Below are positions 818-33,617 of a stretch of 64,000 bases of DNA, piece by piece. A program made the position numbers and the translations under genes. The stretch's first letter is position 1, and each line of letters opens with the position of its first letter. The notes beneath the pieces are model-generated. The model worked only from the letters and a program-made list of their open reading frames with translations. It had not been told where the DNA came from and made no database searches. The DNA lies in the sequence record NC_028999.1. The stretch is one strand, 5' to 3'.

Positions 818-1540
818 TTAAGTTCTCAAGAGTTCTTCGATTACTTCGACAGACTCACTCGGATTCACCAGAGCAGAGTTGATACTGTCGCTAAAGTAAG
901 CACCATTAAGTTTCGAGGTTGTATCCGAGGTGTTCCAAATTACCGAGCGGAAAGGCACAGTCACCGGAGGGACCTTACGTACGTCATCGTGGCTGGAAAG
1001 CCTGTGACGATACAACCTAGTCATATCATCCGGATCACGAGCGATAGTGGAGATAATCAGCTCTACGATCGAACGACCACCTAGGTTAACCCCAGCATGT
1101 AGATCAGCTGTCTCAAACATCTTAGCCATGTCGTAATAGTCCATATACCAAGGGATGTTTCCCTTAGAAATGAACTCATCGTACATGTAGTACGCCAAGG
1201 TATCGTTCACAACCAAAGCCGTGGAAAAGAACACCTTATCACCCGCCTCAAACGAGAACTCGTAATAGGGTTCACTCTCGATCACTACCCGTTCTGTAGA
1301 ACTGGGGAGGATCCGCATCATGGCAATGGTGTTCGATACTCCGTAGTATTCTTCATTGAAGATGATCGGGAAGAAACCTAAGATGAAGACCTCCGAACCT
1401 AACACGGCCAGATTCTTCGCTGTGAATCGCTCAGGGATCTGAATTTTACAGGCAGCATTGGTAACTACGCTACCATTCTCTAGTTCAGTGAGGTGCGTGA
1501 GAGCACGAGCAGCATCACGCTTAAGAGATCTTACGTTCAT
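818..1540 (-). CDS. Conserved phiKZ-like (virion) protein, gp176-like by position
   Basis: 240 aa ORF with RBS (aaggtttcct before ATG), in the head/RNAP block next to the protease. Confidence 0.6.
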   Translation of the reverse strand: MNVRSLKRDAARALTHLTELENGSVVTNAACKIQIPERFTAKNLAVLGSEVFILGFFPIIFNEEYYGVSNTIAMMRILPSSTERVVIESEPYYEFSFEAGDKVFFSTALVVNDTLAYYMYDEFISKGNIPWYMDYYDMAKMFETADLHAGVNLGGRSIVELIISTIARDPDDMTRLYRHRLSSHDDVRKVPPVTVPFRSVIWNTSDTTSKLNGAYFSDSINSALVNPSESVEVIEELLRT

Positions 1541-5667: not shown

Positions 5668-7019
5668 CGAGATCTTCAGATAGTTCGTTAGACTATCCCG
5701 TGCGTTTAAGCACTGCTCTAGGCTTTCCCTAGATGTCGAGACTATATCTTCCCCTACGTGAGAGGCTTCCCATTTCGAGCCCACTTGAGCCCTACACCGT
5801 GATAAGCGGTTAGTCGTTGAACCTTACCCATATCTTTCGACTTAGGGTCTTGGCTGCTGATTGTCCAATCTATCTCGTTTTCAAACCGTCAATACCTGCT
5901 TTCGCGGTACTTGTGGTGAGACAGCTCTAAGGACGTTCCAGCAATTAGAGAAGATACCATCTAGATATCGCTATCTAGTGGGACTGTATCTATTAAATCT
6001 TTGTAATAGCCATAGCGATAGCCATCACTATAAACTTTGTTACCTTTGGATTTCAAACGTTCATTTAACGTAGTGGGTTTTAAGAACATTGACGATGCGC
6101 ACATGTGTGGAGATTCGAAGGCAATCCTTCTACCATTTTCACCAATCAACAGCACGGGTTTCTTCCCAGCTAAAGCCATGTCAAGGTAAGGATCATCAAC
6201 TATTCGCCATTCATCGGTATCCCATCGAATCTGACGGAGACCAGGTATGATTGGTTGAGTTGGATCGTTTATCCATTGGCTAACAGTAGGTAATGCAAAC
6301 CCAATAAATCTAGCTGCATCTGTGAGACTGACGAATTCAGTAATTTCACCGGAAATGAGACACTTTATTAAAACTTTCCGATGATTTAGGTTAGCTTGAA
6401 TCTCTTTATCAATGTCAACTGGTATATACCAAGGTTTATCACTAATGCGTCGATACTGTCGTTTCTCGGGAAACACACGCTCCTGCCCGACTTTGACTCG
6501 GTATGAGATAGCGTCTTTCGATAAACCGTAATATCGACCGCAGTCAATGTAACTGGGGAAAGTGCGAACTTCCCCTGTGATAGAATCCCTGACTTCAATT
6601 GGAATACATTTATCAGAAATTCCAATCTCTCCAGCATGCTCAATATTGCGTTGAGCGGTTACCCATTCTAAGTTATCAAGGCGGTCATCGCCTTTTATGC
6701 CGTTTTTGTGATTCACCACCAGTTTAGTTATATCTGAATCAAAGGGAATGTAGACGAATGCTAGTAATCGATGTCGTCCCCATGTAAGAGTAACTCCATG
6801 ATCGTCCGTCAAACGTAGGTTAACGTAACCAGCTGGATTAACACTTCCCTCCATGAGAGAGCAAGTGTGAAAGCTGTATACATCCCCGTCCCTTGAAATA
6901 AGATATTTACTGTAACCAGGAATCGGCGAGAAATCCTTTAAGTTTATAGCCATGTCTATCCTCCAAAAACACTATAACATTGGAGTATAGACTTCACAAA
7001 CATTCAATAAACAATAACA
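5668..7019 (-). mobile_element. Self-splicing group I intron (1352 nt) carrying a homing endonuclease
   Basis: On the - strand: P element AATTGCTGGAA (~5935-5945), Q AATCAGCAGCCAAG (~5850-5863), R GTTCAACGACTA (~5811-5822), S AAGATATAGTC (~5740-5750). The 5' exon ends in U (7020), the intron ends in G (5668), and splicing is in frame (1081+379 aa). Confidence 0.9.
5961..6953 (-). CDS. Intron-encoded NUMOD4-HNH homing endonuclease
   Basis: N-terminal IPGYSKYLISRDGDVYS (NUMOD4-like), HRLLA...VVNHKNGIKGDDRLDNLEWVTAQRNIEHA (HNH), repeated C-terminal HTH-like modules; GGAGGA RBS. Confidence 0.9.
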   Translation of the reverse strand: MAINLKDFSPIPGYSKYLISRDGDVYSFHTCSLMEGSVNPAGYVNLRLTDDHGVTLTWGRHRLLAFVYIPFDSDITKLVVNHKNGIKGDDRLDNLEWVTAQRNIEHAGEIGISDKCIPIEVRDSITGEVRTFPSYIDCGRYYGLSKDAISYRVKVGQERVFPEKRQYRRISDKPWYIPVDIDKEIQANLNHRKVLIKCLISGEITEFVSLTDAARFIGFALPTVSQWINDPTQPIIPGLRQIRWDTDEWRIVDDPYLDMALAGKKPVLLIGENGRRIAFESPHMCASSMFLKPTTLNERLKSKGNKVYSDGYRYGYYKDLIDTVPLDSDI

Positions 7020-10267: not shown

Positions 10268-11920
10268 TTAGTCTCTAGCGACTGGATCACCAGTCATGTA
10301 CCTGAGGGTGAGGTTCAGCGTGTGAATGTTGATACTAAACGCCAAGCCACCACCAGCTTTGATGTAAGCCAAACGAGATTTGAAGAACTTATCGGATTCC
10401 TCGATTGCCTCTTTGGAGTACACGGCATTAAACGATACCGTGTCACCATCGAAGTCGGCAGTGAGTGGAGCCAGGACCGCTGGCGATACCGACGTAGAGT
10501 CGTGCCACTGCGCAATTTCGTTGAGTTCAAAGACGGGGTATTCGATAGCTGGTTGTGCGGTTAGATCCCTCTCCCAGTTGTAATCCAATGGATAACGCAT
10601 CTCACCTTTTACAGTGGTCTTAACGTACATCTTCATCGGGATCGAACTGTTGTAGTTCTCTACTGGATAGCGGGTAACGAATGCGGAATTCTTGTACCAC
10701 ATAGGTAAACCAGCGAGGTAAACCAACTCGGAATAAGTAATCGGACGAACGAACTTCTTGTGACGATCTTTCGGTAGATCTTCAATGTCACGGAAGATCT
10801 TGTAGTTCTGTTGATCATCCAAATAAACCAGTGCTAGATAGTGATCAGCAATCTCAATCGGCCGACTACGTTGGTCAATAACCTTGAGTTCGTTAATGAC
10901 TCGCTCAAGCCCTTCTGGCGTACCCCAAGTATCGAGGTCTTCAGCAGTGATGTCAACCCATTCCCGTTTGAGCGTCTTCTTATTAACCAATTCAACGCGG
11001 TTAGAGATACTGTCAAAGATCTCACCGACCACTGAATTCCGCAGATGGAAGATCGTCTTGGGTTTAACAGAGACGGCGCCTTGATACAGACCTACCACCG
11101 CATCTTTAAAGCGTGGTCGGTTGGGCGCATCCAGATCCGCAGCGTTAGTATCCAATGAAGAGATCACGTTACGCGTACCGTTTTGTACACGACGGGAAGC
11201 CCACTTGGATTGGATGTAGCCGCCCTTACCAGAAATCAACCGTTCAAAATGACCATAGATCTCCAGTACTGTGTTCTGCATGGCAACACGTTTACGGTCG
11301 TAGATACTCAGGTCGTCGTTAGGACCAAAGAACTCAGGCACACCAAATGACTGGTTGAGTAGATAACGATATTTTTCGTTGATCTCATCCATCGATACTC
11401 GACCGTCAGCGTCGATCTCAGCTTCACGGTAAGCGGCTGGAACAACCAACACATCTTGCATGATACACCGATCTTTGTACTTCTCGATCAGCTGAAGACG
11501 GTTCAGACGGATACCGGATTTGGTACCCCCGAATTCAATCTTACGCCAGTTGTTAAAGAAGAATGTATAACCGGTTTGACCTTCGAGTTCATTAGACCGA
11601 GCGAAATCTCTCCCTATTGGATCGAACACAGCAAAGGCTTTACCCAGGATGATTTCTTCGTAGAATGCCCTGAGTTTGATTAAGTTTCGGTAGATTACTG
11701 GGTGGATAATATCAAGTCCTAAGTGGATGTAACCGAAGTTGCCTTCACGTTGCTTAGAGCCAACTCGCCCGAAGATCTCCACCGAGAACAAACCTTTCTC
11801 ATGGAAGTTACCACCGGTACCTTCAAAGATCTCATGACTGGTGACTTGTCCCACGCGTAGCAACTGAGCCTTGGTAGGGATCAGTAGATCAATGTTAAAT
11901 GGGACTAACGCTTTCCTCAT
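10268..11920 (-). CDS. Virion RNA polymerase beta'-like subunit (gp180-like)
   Basis: GLFSVEIFG, FGYIHL, SRRVQNGTRNVI and catalytic ADFDGD motif. Confidence 0.92.
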   Translation of the reverse strand: MRKALVPFNIDLLIPTKAQLLRVGQVTSHEIFEGTGGNFHEKGLFSVEIFGRVGSKQREGNFGYIHLGLDIIHPVIYRNLIKLRAFYEEIILGKAFAVFDPIGRDFARSNELEGQTGYTFFFNNWRKIEFGGTKSGIRLNRLQLIEKYKDRCIMQDVLVVPAAYREAEIDADGRVSMDEINEKYRYLLNQSFGVPEFFGPNDDLSIYDRKRVAMQNTVLEIYGHFERLISGKGGYIQSKWASRRVQNGTRNVISSLDTNAADLDAPNRPRFKDAVVGLYQGAVSVKPKTIFHLRNSVVGEIFDSISNRVELVNKKTLKREWVDITAEDLDTWGTPEGLERVINELKVIDQRSRPIEIADHYLALVYLDDQQNYKIFRDIEDLPKDRHKKFVRPITYSELVYLAGLPMWYKNSAFVTRYPVENYNSSIPMKMYVKTTVKGEMRYPLDYNWERDLTAQPAIEYPVFELNEIAQWHDSTSVSPAVLAPLTADFDGDTVSFNAVYSKEAIEESDKFFKSRLAYIKAGGGLAFSINIHTLNLTLRYMTGDPVARD

Positions 11921-29513: not shown

Positions 29514-30185
29514 ATGTCTGTTTATGAGCAAATGACCAACCAACCAGATCGCAAGTGCAGATCTGAAACACTACTGCGCTTACTGATCTCCACAAGTTAC
29601 CCCCATGCAACATTAGCCGATCTCACCTTTGCTTTCTCCAATCATAGCGGTCAGAAAGATCTTGATGAACTAGAGAAGATTGCTATACAGATGAAGGACG
29701 TTGAGCGATCCTTCGATATGTTTGACTTCATTCGATGCATCGAGCTTAAACGCCAGGGTGAGCAAATTCAAATCCAGGTTAAACGTCTGGACTTTGATCC
29801 GACTATGCGTACGCTGGAAGACAGTTCCGATACACATGAAGCAATGGCAACCAGTTCAGTTCATCTGACCGATGAACGAGTGAATCTTGCCGATGTCGAT
29901 GTACTAGCTACCCGCTTGCTTGAAATTTTCTATCGTTCTCAAGTTAAAGTGAAGAAGAAAGGGAACGAGATTGCAACTACGGTTTGGAAGAGTCGAACCA
30001 AGCATATTGATCGCCGTAATCCGAAAGCAGAGACAAAAGTTGTAGAAGCTGAATTGGATTTCCAAGCAGCTATTGAAATGATCTCCACGTCTCTTCGCAA
30101 GCGCCGCTTCCACATCCTGTTGACACAGAATACAATTCTACTACTGGATCAGAAGAGCCGCATTTGGGGTGTGTCCAAAGCGTGA
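29514..30185 (+). CDS. Hypothetical protein
   Basis: 223 aa ORF; AAATGTTAC middle-promoter-like motif at 29486-29494. Confidence 0.65.
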   Translation: MSVYEQMTNQPDRKCRSETLLRLLISTSYPHATLADLTFAFSNHSGQKDLDELEKIAIQMKDVERSFDMFDFIRCIELKRQGEQIQIQVKRLDFDPTMRTLEDSSDTHEAMATSSVHLTDERVNLADVDVLATRLLEIFYRSQVKVKKKGNEIATTVWKSRTKHIDRRNPKAETKVVEAELDFQAAIEMISTSLRKRRFHILLTQNTILLLDQKSRIWGVSKA

Positions 30186-30214
30186 GTTAAAAACTTACAC
30201 TTTCCCCAATGATA

Positions 30215-30390
30215 TAGCCAAGGCAGTACGCGTAAGCGCTGCACATTAAGGGGGTGATCCAGCCAATACTTAACCTGATACGTTAAGGCATTTGCGGGAG
30301 CAAAAGCGAGTATCTAACTACGGCGCCTTGGACTAGCTTGGAGCATCGATTCAAGCGGCATAACAGCCCAGCTTCGGCTGGGCTTTATGT
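30215..30390 (+). ncRNA. Candidate structured non-coding RNA
   Basis: ORF-free; three GNRA-capped hairpins; closing CCAAGGC/GCCTTGG helix; upstream AAAACTTAC motif; downstream terminator 30365-30384. Confidence 0.4.
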
Positions 30391-30446
30391 CGTCTTACTC
30401 GGGAGCCAATCTTATGACTTTCTAAAATCCTGACGGAATCACTCAC

Positions 30447-33400
30447 ATGTTCGATACATTTCGCACGCTCTTCAGCGGACTAGACGTAAAAGAAACCGAC
30501 ACGGAGATTATCATCAGTGGTGTAGCTGCTAATGAGATCATTCGTGATATGGACAAGTTCTGGAAGACTACCAAGTTGACTGGGAACATGTTCAATAATG
30601 TCTCTCGTCGCTCGATGAGCTTCTATAAGTTCTTTGCTCCAGAAGTCATGTACATGCTGGAGAACATCAAACACTACCGGAATCGTTGGACGTCTATTAA
30701 GGCGATCAATGCGATTCGCGAAGCGTTGATGGAACATACCTGGTTAAAGGGTACCATTCCAGTTGATCCCAATACTGTACCTGGTCGTTTGGATCTACGT
30801 AAGCTCCAGAACTTACATTTTGACGCAATGACCTACCAGATGGAGTATTTCCAGAACTACTCCTATAGACTCGACCAATACGGTTTAAAAGGTGATCTGA
30901 TCGCAGCTGCTGCCGGCACAGGTAAAGCCCAGCCGCTAACTTCCATGGTCAAAGTACCGGGTGGTTGGAAAGCCATGGGTAATATTCAAGTAGGTGATGT
31001 TGTTACTGCTTGGGACGGTACTCCAACTAAGGTAACTGGCGTTTATCCGCAAGGAAAGAAACAAACCTTTACCGTCACCTTCAAAGACGGCCGGACCACC
31101 AAAGCCTGTGACGAGCACCTGTGGAATGTGTACTGCCAAGATTGGACCCGTTACGGTGGAACCGGGTGGCGCGTAATCAACACCTTGGAGTTATTCGGTC
31201 GTATCCAAAGCGGGAAACAACGGCTGTATGTGCAGTTGTGCAAATCCGAGGAAGGTATTGATGTAGAACTTCCCATTGATCCTTACAACCTGGGAGTTAT
31301 CCTTGGTGACGGATGCATCAGCTCAAACTGTGTGTCGGTGACTAGTGGTGACCCGCAGCTCTTCACAGAGTTCGCTAAAGCCCTTCCAGAAAATCTGGAA
31401 TTGATCACCCGTGATGACATCACGATGGGCGTAATCAACAAAAAGGGTGAACGTAATCCGTATACCAGTGCGTTGCGTGAGATGGGGCTACTTGGTGAGA
31501 ACTCACTGACTAAGTTCATCCCGCAAAACTACCTGATGGCGTCCACTGCACAGCGTTTGGCTTTGGTTCAGGGGCTGATGGACACCGATGGTACTGTTGA
31601 TGTTAACAGTAGCCTGAGTTTCTCGACCAGCAGTTACATGTTGGCCAAACAATTCCAGTATCTGATTCGTTCGCTAGGTGGAATCGCGAAGATCTCGTTC
31701 AAGGAGCCAACCTACACCTACAATGGTGTTAAACAGTACGGGAACATGTCGTACCGGGTACTTGTCCGCTTCGATGTGCCATCAGCTCTTTTCCGACTCG
31801 ACCGCAAGTTAGCACGGTGCAATGACAATCATCAGTACACGGAGAATCTTCGGTTGCAGATCAAGCATGTGAACGTGTCAGACCGGGTAGAGTGTCAATG
31901 CATTCAGGTAGAGCATCAGGACCACCTGTACGTTACCGATGATTTCATTGTGACGCACAACACCTACATGACTTCAGCCATTGCAGAAATGCGCAGTGCG
32001 GAGTTGATTGTTGTAATCTGCCCCAAACAAGCATTAGAAACCGTCTGGTTAGAATCTATCCCCGATATGTTCAAAGCCAAACAGAGCGTCTGGAGTTCAG
32101 CGAATAAACACGCTCCCTATAAAGGTGAGCGTTGGATTGTTTGCCACTACGACGCTATGGATCGACTGATCGAACTACTCCGTGATCAGCGAGTCTATAA
32201 AGGTAAACGGGTTGTAACTATCCTTGATGAATCCCACAACCTGAACGATCCAAACTCGGCTCGGTCTTTGTACTATCAGACCATCTGTAAGATCCTAGGT
32301 AGCGAAGACAATCTGTTTGCATCGGGTACACCGGTGAAAGCACTTGGCTCTGAACTAATCGGTTTACTGCGTGTGGTGGATGACATGTTCACACCAGCGG
32401 TAGAAGAACGGTTCCGCAAGATGTACGGTAAAGAAGCCAGTAAAGGTCTTGATATTATCCGTCATCGCTTGGGTCTAATGTCCTTTAAGGTGGAGAAGAA
32501 AGAAACTGGTCTCCAACCTCCGATCATGAAGCCGTATCCAATCAAGATCCCCAATGGGGAACTGTTCACGCTACCGATGATCAAAAAGGACATGGAGAAA
32601 TTCATCAATGAACGCTGGGCTTATTATAAGTCCCGTCGTCCGAATGATGAGAAACTCTGGAACCAGATGTTGGATATCCATCGCAAGTCACTCAAGACAC
32701 GCGATCAAGTCAAAGCCTTTGAAGACTACCTGCGTTTGGTAGAACTCGTTAAGCGTACTCCTGACCCTCGTTACATCGGTGAGGAAATCAAGGCAACGAA
32801 CGTTTACGAGAAGCGGATCTTTGAACCGACCCTTCCACGCACGATGATCCATCAGTTCCGTGACATCAAGTCCGTGATCAAATACACCAACCTTAAGATC
32901 CAAGGTGAATGCCTGGGTCGAGTGTTGGGTGGTAAACGGATTGAAGCGCACGTAGCGATGGTTCCGTATATCGATTGGGTGGGGATTGTTGAGTCTACTG
33001 AGAAGAAGACGATCATGTTCACAAGCTTCGTTGAAGCGGTGGAAGCGTCTGAAATTCACACTACTAAACTAGGGATGAAACCCACAGTTGTGTACGGTAA
33101 GACGACAGGGGATCTAGCAGGCATCGTTAAACGCTTCGATGAAAATAAGTCCATCAACCCATTGTTAGCAACCTTCGCTTCGCTATCTACAGCTGTACGC
33201 TTGACCATGGCTGACACCATGATCCTATTGAACTCTCCATTCCGTGCCTATATTCTGGAACAAGCCATCGCGCGTATCTATCGCATGGGTCAAGACTCGC
33301 AAACTTACGTCTACCAATGCACACTTGATACGGGGGAGGTTCCGAACATCTCTACGCGATCCGCTGACATCCTGGCGTGGTCTACTGCTCAAGTGGAAGC

Positions 33401-33617
33401 GATCATGGGTATCAAGTCTCCTCTGCAAATGGAGGATGCGGCCAGCTTTGAAAATCTAGCTGAAGAACTCAAGTACGATGAGAACCGAATCATGCATCGG
33501 ATTCTGGCTAATGCTTTCGAAGCGTATGGTATTGAAATTTCCCAAGAAGACTTCATTGTGAAGTCTGTTGTTAAACACAAACCTTTAGTGCCCGCATACA
33601 TGCGGTTCGGAGGATAA
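30447..33617 (+). CDS. SF2/SNF2-like helicase (phiKZ gp203-like) containing an intein
   Basis: Walker A AAAGTGK|T, ILDESH (DExH), ASGTP motif III, QAIARIYRMGQ motif VI. Confidence 0.9.
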   Translation: MFDTFRTLFSGLDVKETDTEIIISGVAANEIIRDMDKFWKTTKLTGNMFNNVSRRSMSFYKFFAPEVMYMLENIKHYRNRWTSIKAINAIREALMEHTWLKGTIPVDPNTVPGRLDLRKLQNLHFDAMTYQMEYFQNYSYRLDQYGLKGDLIAAAAGTGKAQPLTSMVKVPGGWKAMGNIQVGDVVTAWDGTPTKVTGVYPQGKKQTFTVTFKDGRTTKACDEHLWNVYCQDWTRYGGTGWRVINTLELFGRIQSGKQRLYVQLCKSEEGIDVELPIDPYNLGVILGDGCISSNCVSVTSGDPQLFTEFAKALPENLELITRDDITMGVINKKGERNPYTSALREMGLLGENSLTKFIPQNYLMASTAQRLALVQGLMDTDGTVDVNSSLSFSTSSYMLAKQFQYLIRSLGGIAKISFKEPTYTYNGVKQYGNMSYRVLVRFDVPSALFRLDRKLARCNDNHQYTENLRLQIKHVNVSDRVECQCIQVEHQDHLYVTDDFIVTHNTYMTSAIAEMRSAELIVVICPKQALETVWLESIPDMFKAKQSVWSSANKHAPYKGERWIVCHYDAMDRLIELLRDQRVYKGKRVVTILDESHNLNDPNSARSLYYQTICKILGSEDNLFASGTPVKALGSELIGLLRVVDDMFTPAVEERFRKMYGKEASKGLDIIRHRLGLMSFKVEKKETGLQPPIMKPYPIKIPNGELFTLPMIKKDMEKFINERWAYYKSRRPNDEKLWNQMLDIHRKSLKTRDQVKAFEDYLRLVELVKRTPDPRYIGEEIKATNVYEKRIFEPTLPRTMIHQFRDIKSVIKYTNLKIQGECLGRVLGGKRIEAHVAMVPYIDWVGIVESTEKKTIMFTSFVEAVEASEIHTTKLGMKPTVVYGKTTGDLAGIVKRFDENKSINPLLATFASLSTAVRLTMADTMILLNSPFRAYILEQAIARIYRMGQDSQTYVYQCTLDTGEVPNISTRSADILAWSTAQVEAIMGIKSPLQMEDAASFENLAEELKYDENRIMHRILANAFEAYGIEISQEDFIVKSVVKHKPLVPAYMRFGG
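30927..31961 (+). mobile_element. Class 3 intein (345 aa) with a LAGLIDADG endonuclease
   Basis: Ala1 start AQPL, block B DEHLW, LAGLIDADG-like LGVILGDG and LVQGLMDTDG, block F CQCIQV, block G IVTHN, +1 Thr; inserted between K and T of Walker A. Confidence 0.9.

What the first reader, a model, noticed from the sequence alone, without database searches (positions are those of the whole stretch)
30186..30390. Candidate structured ncRNA with three GNRA tetraloops between its own promoter-like motif and a terminator
Seen: a 260-bp ORF-free gap. Hairpins are CGC-GTAA-GCG (30229-38, extendable by GCAG/CTGC), GGG-GTGA-TCC (30251-60), TTGC-GGGA-GCAA (30292-30303) and TTAAC/GTTAA (30270-86). There is also ATACT/AGTAT pairing (30266-70 with 30309-13) and a long-range CCAAGGC/GCCTTGG closing helix (30218-24 with 30325-31), some in alternative registers. 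A GCTTG/CAAGC hairpin and a UUCG terminator (30365-84) follow. AAAACTTAC at 30190-98 fits the phiKZ middle-promoter consensus AAanntTAC (about -24), which would put the start at ~30218, where the closing helix begins. Inference: a ~120-170 nt compact RNA (ribozyme, protein sponge or tRNA/6S-like mimic). I do not recognise it as a known family; it is not a tRNA.
Basis: partly seen in the sequence, partly recalled or inferred. Interest (0 to 1): 0.65.

Follow-up and report, generated by a model that had tools for sequence, protein, structure and literature searches.

The report
Phage RNA antisense to 16S tail
The gap between two genes of the giant Pseudomonas phage PhiPA3 holds a small, folded, non-coding RNA gene shared by phiKZ-like phages. 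Its best-kept unpaired stretch is the mirror image of the last 18 bases of the host's 16S ribosomal RNA, so the phage probably acts on the ribosome's mRNA-docking tail with an RNA.

Summary
The window is Pseudomonas phage PhiPA3. The 261-bp gap between gp232 and the gp233 helicase holds a real, single-copy non-coding RNA gene of about 175 nt (window 30217 to about 30391, + strand).

Homologues exist in phiKZ, 201phi2-1, Psa21, Phabio, Noxifer, D6, Viktualia, the PhiPA3-like phages and about 15 metagenomic jumbo-phage contigs. Across 25 members, 20 of 21 modelled base pairs show compensatory changes, and 93% of cells are paired against 27-36% in slid controls.

The GGG-GUGA-UCC and UUAAC/GUUAA hairpins do not.

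The invariant junction 30247-30264 (UAAGGGGGUGAUCCAGCC) complements the last 18 nt of Pseudomonas 16S rRNA, the anti-Shine-Dalgarno tail plus the base of helix 45. It is the best such match in the 309-kb genome (-36 kcal/mol). A second, collinear antisense block (30318-30331) faces 16S about 1496-1514.

No conserved ORF follows the block. The orthologous terminator in 201phi2-1 is an experimentally mapped, very strong termination site.

Most likely the RNA pairs with the 16S 3' end. Binding and its effect are untested. No Rfam family or paper I could read describes it. This scan reached the same reading earlier on phiKZ and D6 relatives.

The parts
30189..30199 (+). Promoter-like motif AAAAACTTACA; 30191-30199 fits the phiKZ middle-promoter motif AAanTTACc
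   Evidence: Sequence. Motif and its position about -24 come from PMC4666361. The TAC-N19-G spacing is identical in PhiPA3, HPP-Temi, phiKZ, 201phi2-1 and Viktualia (my hand count on the sequences printed; upstream flanks also). The start site was not measured in PhiPA3.
30209..30217 (+). Conserved ATGATATAG just before the RNA body; predicted +1 is G30217 (a TATAG/TATG-type start region)
   Evidence: Invariant TATAG in named phages; TATG in several metagenomic members. The phiKZ late motif is TATG with G = +1. Inferred, not mapped.
30218..30224 (+). P1 5' strand (CCAAGGC); pairs with 30325-30331; also resembles 16S sense 1497-1503 (CAAGGUA)
   Evidence: Covariation: the outer P1 pairs show 4-6 pair types.
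30225..30240 (+). P2 hairpin (AG-UA-CGC-GUAA-GCG-CU); variable loop in relatives
   Evidence: Two modelled pairs are kept in most members (20 and 14 of 25 cells unchanged, 1 and 7 with changes on both sides). The inner stem is CGC/GCG in PhiPA3 and GCG/CGC in phiKZ, read by hand.
30247..30264 (+). J2/3 block UAAGGGGGUGAUCCAGCC: complement of 16S rRNA 1525-1542 (17 Watson-Crick pairs plus 1 G-U)
   Evidence: 16S 3' end verified. Best duplex of about 618,000 genome windows, -36.0 against the next best -30.1 kcal/mol. Position table.
30277..30281 (+). P3 5' strand GAUAC; pairs with 30310-30314 (GUAUC)
   Evidence: All 5 pairs covary: GGUAC/GUACC in 201phi2-1, GGGG/CCCC in phiKZ, AUGAGC/GCUCAU in D6.
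30288..30307 (+). P4 hairpin GC-A-UUUGC-GGGA-GCAAA-A-GC with a GNRA-type loop
   Evidence: All 5 inner and 2 outer pairs covary. In 23 of the 25 members the loop is GGGA, GAGA, GUGA or GCGA; phiKZ has CAGGA and L058 has a larger insert here (alignment; for Psa21, Noxifer and G001).
30310..30314 (+). P3 3' strand GUAUC
   Evidence: See P3.
30315..30331 (+). J3/1 (UAACUACGGC) plus P1 3' strand (GCCUUGG). CUACGGCGCCUUGG is collinear antisense to 16S about 1496-1514
   Evidence: RNAduplex -26 kcal/mol, 0 of 300 shuffles. This is the best of all 16S windows for PhiPA3 and 9 other members.
30336..30358 (+). P5 hairpin (GCUUGGAGCAUCGAUUCAAGC); variable, absent in some members
30365..30391 (+). Intrinsic terminator AGCCCAGC-UUCG-GCUGGGCU plus UUAUGUC; predicted 3' end about 30391
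   Evidence: Fold. The orthologous site in 201phi2-1 (record 229,201 = L003:1676) is an ONT-cappable-seq termination site chosen for more than 99% efficiency, and it is stronger than lambda T0 in vivo (PMC11512511).

Best explanation
This is a stand-alone gene for a non-coding RNA of about 175 nt, conserved in phiKZ-like (chimalli-type) jumbo phages of Pseudomonas.

Proposed expression (inferred): the phage's own RNA polymerase transcribes it from a middle-promoter-like element, and a strong intrinsic terminator ends it.

Fold (shown by covariation): a closing helix P1 encloses a multiloop with hairpin P2 and the P3-P4 arm. Two junction strands are left unpaired.

Proposed action (inferred): the 5' junction strand, a 'super Shine-Dalgarno' of 14-18 nt, base-pairs with the free 3' tail of host 16S rRNA (1530-1542) and on into the base of helix 45. 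The RNA thereby docks on 30S or 70S ribosomes, or on nascent 16S. It occupies the anti-Shine-Dalgarno sequence far more stably than any mRNA: about -36 kcal/mol against -4 to -8 for the phage's own leaders.

In the phiKZ, PhiPA3 and 201phi2-1 clades, the 3' junction plus the P1 3' strand could then pair with 16S about 1496-1514.

The consequence for translation (blocking, sequestering, shielding or tethering ribosomes) is not known.
For: Identity and synteny: the window is PhiPA3. The element, not the flanking coding DNA, is what blastn finds in phiKZ, 201phi2-1, Viktualia, D6 and the PhiPA3-like phages, usually beside the 5' end of the SNF2 helicase.

Structure: 93.3% of cells paired, 20 of 21 pairs compensatory, covariation 0.749 against 0.209 in shuffles (0 of 500), slid controls 27-36% (for the 8 named phages).

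16S target:
- The 38-nt 16S 3' end is exact in many Pseudomonas genomes and ends the SSU rRNA model match.
- The block is the best complement to the last 20 nt of 16S among about 618,000 windows of the genome. It lies 8 sd from the mean and 6 kcal/mol beyond the runner-up.
- In the 10 members found without the block pattern, 13 consecutive positions facing 1528-1540 are invariant.
- Opposite U1541 and U1537 the letters are A or G, with one C in Noxifer. Opposite G1526 and G1525 they are C or U, apart from Phabio, which diverges there. Such changes keep pairing.
- Conservation stops where 16S ends; the position facing A1542 is U or C, and the flanks vary freely.

Not coding: no start codon lies 3-15 nt after the GGNGG core in 16 of 25 members, and none is conserved.

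No other target in the phage: the only complement of 10 nt or more to the block in the genome is its own antisense. The gene is single copy.

Discrete transcript: the orthologous terminator is mapped and validated in 201phi2-1. The promoter motif has conserved spacing (motif; spacing hand-counted).

Second antisense block.
Against: - No transcript, 5' end or ribosome binding has been shown for PhiPA3. The only runs holding the locus gave sparse contigs.
- The supplementary tables that might list the phiKZ or 201phi2-1 orthologues as sRNA candidates were not readable.
- Single-sequence thermodynamic folding gives the block only a modest excess of unpaired probability: 0.45 against 0.38 overall.
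- Most members carry G, not A, opposite U1537. This is a wobble rather than the optimal pair.
- The phage's own genes use Shine-Dalgarno sequences (59% of 374 ORFs against 18% of controls), so an indiscriminate ribosome blocker would also hurt the phage.
- Pairing beyond 1530 needs helix 45 to open, which is unlikely on a mature subunit.
- The 15 IMG/VR members were retrieved with a pattern that contains the block, so their block identity is not independent evidence. The covariance model also rewards the block.
- No member was found in the Serratia, Erwinia, Klebsiella or Xanthomonas relatives examined. The model was run on the whole genomes of BUCT660 and pEa_SNUABM_37 and on the helicase-flanking loci of all five, and a block pattern was run on all five genomes.
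- P. aeruginosa's own 16S and genome were not fetched, so other host targets were not excluded.
Confidence: 0.6

Rival explanations
1. Relic or protein-binding site. The RNA is real and structured, but its 16S-antisense blocks are a leftover of its origin, a captured antisense piece of host rDNA. Alternatively they are kept because a phage or host protein, or an internal tertiary contact, reads that sequence. On this view the RNA does not work by pairing with 16S.
For: Two collinear antisense blocks covering about 33 of the last 48 nt of 16S look like descent from an rDNA fragment. The block is only moderately accessible in thermodynamic folds. The G-U at 1537 is suboptimal for pairing.
Against: A relic would decay. 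Instead, 13 positions are invariant across genera whose remaining sequence is 70-80% identical. The few changes are nearly all pairing-preserving transitions, and conservation ends exactly at the 16S terminus. No conserved internal partner for the block exists in the consensus structure.
Confidence: 0.17
2. Bipartite guide or helix-45 invader, a variant of the main reading. The two junction strands act together like an H/ACA-type guide pocket: lower stem P1, two antisense strands, upper stem P3-P4. They would pair on both sides of the tip of helix 45, mainly on nascent or immature 16S. This would block 30S maturation, or present the loop (A1518/A1519) or the 3' end to an enzyme.
For: The geometry and collinearity of the two blocks. 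The 16S window 1491-1524 is the single best 16S match for the 3' strand in 10 of 25 members and scores below the shuffle mean in 25 of 25, with z from -1.1 to -4.9. The P1 5' strand equals 16S sense CAAGG.AG, so it could release the 3' guide by strand exchange.
Against: The second block is weak in D6, Phabio, Noxifer and several metagenomic members. It is locked in P1 in the free RNA. No partner enzyme has been identified. There are no H or ACA boxes, and no snoRNA model reaches threshold.
Confidence: 0.13
3. Leader or micro-ORF. The block is an ordinary, very strong Shine-Dalgarno sequence. It would drive translation of a tiny peptide, or serve as a ribosome standby site for the downstream gene.
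For: The sequence is an extended SD. Some annotators called 30-aa ORFs here in Viktualia and HPP-Temi.
Against: 16 of 25 members have no start codon 3-15 nt downstream. Where one exists it is 13-15 nt away, and ORF length varies from 3 to more than 52 codons. The downstream genes differ between phages: helicase, gp204, gp305. A terminator chosen for more than 99% efficiency separates the element from them.
Confidence: 0.05
4. DNA-level element only, such as a promoter/terminator cluster or a recombination or replication site, with no functional RNA product.
For: The element lies at a rearrangement point. The helicase is inverted in PhiPA3 relative to phiKZ.
Against: Compensatory changes in 20 of 21 pairs are strand-specific RNA-level constraints. 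The termination site was mapped on RNA in 201phi2-1.
Confidence: 0.03

Closest known systems
Shine-Dalgarno sequence of bacterial mRNAs
   Same: The same pairing partner (16S 1535-1540 and its neighbours) and the same core sequence GGAGG/GGGGG-UGAUCC.
   Different: 14-18 nt instead of 4-9. No start codon or ORF follows. It sits in a junction of a terminated, structured non-coding RNA and would act in trans.
6S RNA (RNA polymerase decoy that mimics an open promoter)
   Same: The concept: a small stable RNA that imitates the nucleic-acid ligand of a core machine and occupies its binding site.
   Different: The target would be the ribosome, not RNA polymerase. There is no rod-with-bubble fold, and no Rfam 6S match at the gathering score or up to E = 10 on the locus.
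Ribosome-associated ncRNAs, e.g. Haloferax Val-tRF
   Same: A small RNA that binds the small subunit and competes with mRNA (PMC5711459).
   Different: Val-tRF is a tRNA fragment that binds around the mRNA channel and explicitly does not act through the SD/anti-SD interaction. Here the anti-SD tail itself is the predicted target, and the RNA is a dedicated phage gene.
H/ACA guide RNAs
   Same: A lower stem, two antisense strands of an internal loop that pair on either side of an unpaired target segment, and an upper stem.
   Different: No H or ACA boxes. The unpaired target stretch would be 10 nt. An extra hairpin (P2) sits in the loop. Only a sub-threshold 16.8-bit snR81 hit was found, on the opposite strand. 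No known bacterial or phage partner proteins.
phiKZ and 201phi2-1 sRNA candidates from ONT-cappable-seq and Grad-seq
   Same: The same phages and the same class: short terminated transcripts of 250 nt or less, conserved among jumbo phages (PMC10914365, PMC11512511, PMC8545117).
   Different: The loci described in the texts are others (upstream of gp182/gp277, PHIKZ221, PHIKZ302, p40, PHIKZ298). None is linked to 16S. Whether this locus is in their supplementary tables could not be checked.

Membership tests
Any Rfam 15 family | Match at or above the family's gathering score | tested here: not met
   No match in the region at gathering score. The best sub-threshold hits are 13-17 bits, E 1-7, and include terminator look-alikes.
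tRNA / tmRNA | Cloverleaf or tmRNA detected by ARAGORN | tested here: not met
   0 genes in the window.
Conserved structured ncRNA (new family) | Homologues in several genera with compensatory base-pair changes | tested here: met
   25 members; 20 of 21 pairs compensatory; 0 of 500 shuffles reach the observed values. Caveat: the alignment is fitted to the model.
Stand-alone transcription unit of a phiKZ-like phage | Middle-promoter motif AAanTTACc centred about -24, or TATG at +1 | tested here: inconclusive
   Motif present at 30191-99, with the same 19-nt spacing to the G of TATAG in five phages (spacing hand-counted). The start site has not been measured for this locus.
Stand-alone transcription unit of a phiKZ-like phage | Functional terminator at the 3' end | tested here: met
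   Hairpin plus U-tract. The orthologous termination site at 229,201 in 201phi2-1 was mapped and is stronger than lambda T0 in vivo. This is published data for the orthologue, not for PhiPA3.
mRNA Shine-Dalgarno / small ORF | Start codon 5-10 nt downstream and a conserved reading frame | tested here: not met
Trans-acting antisense RNA against 16S 3' end | Conserved complementarity to the target, with variation limited to pairing-preserving changes | tested here: met
Trans-acting antisense RNA against 16S 3' end | Antisense segment unpaired in the RNA's own fold | tested here: inconclusive
   Unpaired in the covariation-supported consensus. Single-sequence partition functions give only 0.45 unpaired against 0.38 overall.
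Trans-acting antisense RNA against 16S 3' end | Physical binding to 30S or 16S, and an effect on translation | not testable with these tools
   Needs biochemistry or RNA-RNA interactome data.
H/ACA-type guide RNA | H (ANANNA) and ACA boxes, and Cbf5-type partners | tested here: not met
   No snoRNA model reaches threshold. Only the pocket-like geometry is shared.

The most novel reading that the evidence does not exclude
The RNA is a phage-encoded, rRNA-directed guide. Its 18-nt toehold would capture the 16S tail. Strand exchange would then release its second antisense strand, so that helix 45 is pried open on nascent or free 30S subunits. That would block subunit maturation, or hand the helix-45 loop or the 3' end to a phage enzyme. 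It would be an RNA-guided attack on, or reprogramming of, host ribosomes, with no described precedent in phages.
Probability: 0.15. Interest if true: 0.95.

Novelty: categorically new. Interest (0 to 1): 0.8.

Why it matters
Phages are known to seize the ribosome with proteins. To my knowledge, no natural RNA that targets the anti-Shine-Dalgarno tail of 16S rRNA in trans has been described, and none appeared in the papers I searched.

If the pairing is real, nucleus-forming jumbo phages have an RNA-based handle on translation initiation. It could serve host shut-off, ribosome protection or ribosome tethering, and would open a new chapter of host takeover.

It would also give a compact natural module for sequestering or tagging bacterial ribosomes. 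And it would explain one of the most conserved non-coding stretches in a phage group now used as a model and as a therapy candidate.

The hypothesis can be tested directly with existing phiKZ and 201phi2-1 datasets and with simple binding assays.

Tried and rejected
- Rfam at gathering and permissive thresholds: nothing. ARAGORN: nothing.
- Reads: the only runs holding the locus are tiny contig sets from one RNA-seq/RIP-seq study and a wastewater metagenome. They show neither expression nor its absence.
- Supplementary tables of the phiKZ dRNA-seq, phiKZ ONT-cappable-seq and 201phi2-1 papers are not held. I could not see whether the orthologues are listed as sRNA candidates.
- MAFFT/RNAalifold alone mis-paired the block with P2. 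I replaced this with a hand-drawn structure and covariance models R1 and R2.
- The GGG-GUGA-UCC mini-hairpin and the UUAAC/GUUAA hairpin are not conserved. The latter conflicts with P3.
- Other chimalliviruses have no convincing member. The model was run on the helicase-flanking loci of Serratia BUCT660, Erwinia pEa_SNUABM_37 and Special G, Klebsiella KpLz-2_45 and Xanthomonas LucasX, and on the whole genomes of BUCT660 and pEa_SNUABM_37. A block pattern with up to 2 mismatches was run on all five genomes. The 20-bit Erwinia hit lacks the block, and a GGGGGTGATCCA site in Special G lies inside a gene.
- A second partial 16S complement at window about 10272-10291 (- strand) lies in coding sequence and was set aside.
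- Alternative target inside the phage genome: none.
- L092 (19 bits) was not accepted as a member.
- A protein-based scan for more helicase loci gave only two contigs.

Full report
**What the window is.** Megablast identifies the window as Pseudomonas phage PhiPA3 (NC_028999; window position = record position minus 186,000). The finding lies in the 261-bp gap between gp232 (29514-30185, homologue of phiKZ gp200) and gp233 (30447-33617, an SNF2/DarB-like helicase, homologue of phiKZ gp203).

**Checking the observation.** On its own the sequence does not fold unusually well: z = -0.76 for the 131-nt core and -2.24 for the whole gap. Rfam finds no family and ARAGORN finds no tRNA. The decision therefore rests on comparison with relatives.

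**Conservation.**
- A sensitive blastn with 401 nt around the gap hits only the intergenic part (window 30208-30395), not the flanking coding ends. Identities are 81-83% in PhiPA3-like phages (HPP-Temi, PA1C, phiHQ, BRkr and others), 74% in 201phi2-1, 77% in Viktualia, and 85% over the first 56 nt in phiKZ and its many close relatives, where the region is unannotated. D6 was found with the 201phi2-1 copy as query.
- In phiKZ, HPP-Temi, PA1C, phiHQ and D6 the element is divergent from the helicase start. Viktualia has one gene in between. In PhiPA3 the helicase is inverted and lies downstream. In 201phi2-1 the element sits between gp304 and gp305. The neighbours change but the element stays.
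- Phabio's copy was found by synteny, in a 320-bp gap near its helicase.

**Structure.** I drew a structure by hand from the named phages and built covariance model R1 from four PhiPA3-like sequences. I rebuilt it as R2 from the eight phages it recovered.
- R2 then found 16 further hits among the IMG/VR contigs fetched with the block pattern. One is a phiKZ-type record the size of phage PA7, and one (L092, 19 bits) I did not accept. Most of the accepted ones lie on contigs of 170-310 kb.
- R2 also found, with no pattern pre-filter, copies in whole genomes: Psa21 (63 bits), Noxifer (24.5 bits) and a 325-kb IMG/VR contig (88 bits).
- PhiPA3 has one copy.
- On the 25-member alignment, 93.3% of pair cells are standard pairs and 20 of 21 pairs have changes on both sides. 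The covariation score is 0.749 against 0.209 in shuffles (0 of 500 reach it). Sliding the partners by 1-3 columns gives 27-36% paired. The eight named phages alone give 97.6% paired and 13 of 21 compensatory pairs. The alignment is fitted to the model, which favours the structure. However, the hand reading of raw sequences shows the same exchanges, for example P3 as GAUAC/GUAUC, GGUAC/GUACC, GGGG/CCCC, AUGAGC/GCUCAU and GUACUC/GAGUAC.

**Resulting anatomy in window coordinates.**
- P1: 30218-24 with 30325-31.
- P2: 30225-40.
- Junction J2/3, containing the block at 30247-64.
- P3: 30277-81 with 30310-14.
- P4: 30288-30307, with a GNRA-type loop.
- Junction J3/1: 30315-24.
- A variable hairpin P5: 30336-58.
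- Terminator: 30365-84.

The ATACT/AGTAT pairing is replaced by the P3 register. TTAAC/GTTAA is incompatible with P3 and not conserved. GGG-GUGA-UCC is not a conserved hairpin.

**The key feature.** The most conserved stretch, UAAGGGGGUGAUCCAGCC (30247-64), is the complement of the 3' end of 16S rRNA.
- I first recalled the Pseudomonas 16S end from memory and then tested it. The 38-mer GTAGCCGTAGGGGAACCTGCGGCTGGATCACCTCCTTA is exact in many Pseudomonas genomes, including P. putida, P. fluorescens, P. viridiflava and P. avellanae. It ends the SSU rRNA model match in P. putida PSE7 (L179:1408-2944, model 1-1533).
- An RNAduplex scan of every 26-nt window on both strands of the 309-kb PhiPA3 genome against the last 20 nt of 16S puts this site first, at -36.0 kcal/mol. 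The runner-up scores -30.1. The mean is -9.6 with sd 3.2.
- I tabulated the ten members found without the block pattern (PhiPA3, HPP-Temi, PA1C, phiKZ, 201phi2-1, Viktualia, D6, Phabio, Psa21, Noxifer). The 13 positions facing 16S 1528-1540 are invariant.
- The variable positions nearly all change by transitions that keep pairing. Opposite U1541 and U1537 the letters are A or G, with one C in Noxifer. Opposite G1526 and G1525 they are C or U, apart from Phabio, which diverges after 1528.
- The position facing the terminal A1542 is U or C, and both flanks vary freely. Conservation therefore begins where 16S ends.
- For the IMG/VR members the block was part of the search pattern, so its identity there adds nothing independent.

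**Not a translation signal.** Sixteen of 25 members have no ATG, GTG or TTG 3-15 nt downstream of the GGNGG core. The rest have one at 13-15 nt, with ORFs of 3 to more than 52 codons. The genes downstream differ between phages, and a terminator intervenes.

**No target in the phage itself.** Only the element's own antisense carries 10 nt or more complementary to the block.

**A second antisense block.** Downstream of P3-P4, J3/1 plus the 3' strand of P1 is complementary to 16S about 1496-1514, and in the PA1C and HPP-Temi lineage back to about 1488. The sequences are CUACGGCGCCUUGG in PhiPA3 and CUACGGUGCCUUGACGACU in PA1C.
- The block is collinear with the first one.
- Duplex energies are -17 to -31 kcal/mol, below the shuffle mean in 25 of 25 members. 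For PhiPA3, HPP-Temi, PA1C and L087, 0 of 300 shuffles reach the observed value.
- When all 16S windows are scanned with this strand, 1491-1524 is the single best for 10 of 25 members (PhiPA3, HPP-Temi, PA1C, phiKZ, 201phi2-1, Viktualia, L087, L058, L030, L034). In the rest it is within the top 0.1-8%, and weak in D6, Phabio and Noxifer.
- The RNA therefore reads like an antisense copy of roughly the last 50 nt of 16S, in which the tip of helix 45 (1515-1524) is replaced by the P3-P4 arm. The 5' strand of P1 (CAAGGCAG) resembles the 16S sense strand (CAAGGUAG).
- The geometry recalls an H/ACA guide pocket: lower stem, two antisense strands, upper stem. The defining boxes are absent and no snoRNA model reaches threshold.
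- I treat this second block as a real observation of uncertain function.

**Transcription unit.**
- phiKZ middle promoters carry AAanTTACc centred at about -24. Late promoters carry TATG with G as +1 (PMC4666361).
- PhiPA3 has AAACTTACA at 30191-99. The distance from TAC to the G of TATAG (G30217) is 19 nt in PhiPA3, HPP-Temi, phiKZ, 201phi2-1 and Viktualia, by my hand count on the sequences. Several metagenomic members have TATG at that place.
- At the 3' end, the 201phi2-1 orthologue's terminator ends at record position 229,201 (L003:1676). That is one of the termination sites mapped by ONT-cappable-seq and chosen for more than 99% termination efficiency. It outperformed lambda T0 in an in vivo terminator trap (PMC11512511). 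By alignment the PhiPA3 3' end is about 30391, giving an RNA of about 175 nt.
- The same paper reports 11 small RNAs of under 250 nt, three of them intergenic, but the table is not held. The phiKZ study lists 17 candidates in a table I could not read.
- No text I could search links any phage RNA to the 16S tail.
- Laying public runs on the locus gave only a few short contigs and no information on expression.

**Mechanism.**
- Shown: a conserved, structured, ORF-less element with promoter-like and terminator signals. It carries an invariant junction segment with 14-18 nt of complementarity to the 16S 3' terminus, unique in the genome.
- Inferred: the RNA pairs with the single-stranded 16S tail (1530-1542) on 30S or 70S particles or on nascent 16S, extending into the base of helix 45.
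- Such a duplex would outcompete any mRNA leader. PhiPA3's own leaders give -4 to -8 kcal/mol, and 59% of 374 long ORFs have an upstream SD-like match against 18% of controls. Because the phage itself uses SDs, a simple global sponge is unattractive unless timing or dosage limits it. Shielding, tethering or action on a subpopulation (free or immature 30S) remain open.
- The closest described ribosome-bound regulatory RNA that I could read about, Haloferax Val-tRF, binds the mRNA channel and explicitly does not use the SD/anti-SD interaction (PMC5711459).

**Weak points.**
- There are no expression or binding data for PhiPA3.
- The block has only a modest excess of unpaired probability in single-sequence folds: 0.45 against 0.38.
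- Most members have a G-U wobble at U1537.
- Family membership partly depends on a pattern that contains the block.
- No members were found in the chimalliviruses of Serratia, Erwinia, Klebsiella or Xanthomonas that I examined.
- The P. aeruginosa genome was not scanned for alternative targets.

**Relation to earlier notes of this scan.** After I had reached the 16S reading (note), look-ups showed that the scan had already noted the same RNA on related pieces (phiKZ, D6 and others) with the same interpretation. These notes agree with my results but are not independent evidence. This report adds:
- the 25-member covariation count;
- the pairing-preserving variation table;
- the genome-wide uniqueness test;
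- the statistics for the second block;
- the promoter spacing;
- the link to the published termination site at 229,201.

**Verdict.** This is a real and, as far as the searchable literature goes, undescribed phage RNA family. I put the probability that it is a genuine ncRNA gene at about 0.9, and the probability that it acts by pairing with the 16S 3' end at about 0.6.

Noticed in passing
window 5716-6004 (- strand): Rfam group I catalytic intron match (RF00028, 67.8 bits, full model 1-253). It probably interrupts a PhiPA3 gene.
   Followed up: no
window 30447-33617 (+), gp233 helicase: The helicase is 1056 aa, against about 700 aa in relatives. It carries a LAGLIDADG_3 domain at residues 369-423 between the N-terminal domain and the SNF2/Helicase_C core. 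Residues about 130-390 match intein-bearing mycobacteriophage terminases. This is probably an intein with a homing endonuclease. The gene is also inverted relative to phiKZ.
   Followed up: partly
window about 10272-10291 (- strand): GGTGATCCAGTCGC is the third-best complement to the 16S 3' end in the genome (-29.1 kcal/mol). It lies at the end of one ORF, about 25 nt before the ATG of the next. It is likely chance or an unusual upstream ribosome contact.
   Followed up: partly
downstream of the terminators in the family members (e.g. window 30385-30392; L003:1669-1676): The terminator hairpin is followed by a conserved UUUAUGCC/UUUAUGUC rather than a plain U-run. This recurs at other PhiPA3, Psa21, Noxifer and Phabio terminators, so it looks like a clade-specific terminator motif.
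   Followed up: no
L058:2755-2910 and downstream (IMG/VR 69.8-kb contig): Right after this member's terminator, the upstream promoter-like stretch (TTAAGTATTTGTTTGTGTA..TATATAG) is repeated. This suggests a tandem second small transcription unit.
   Followed up: no
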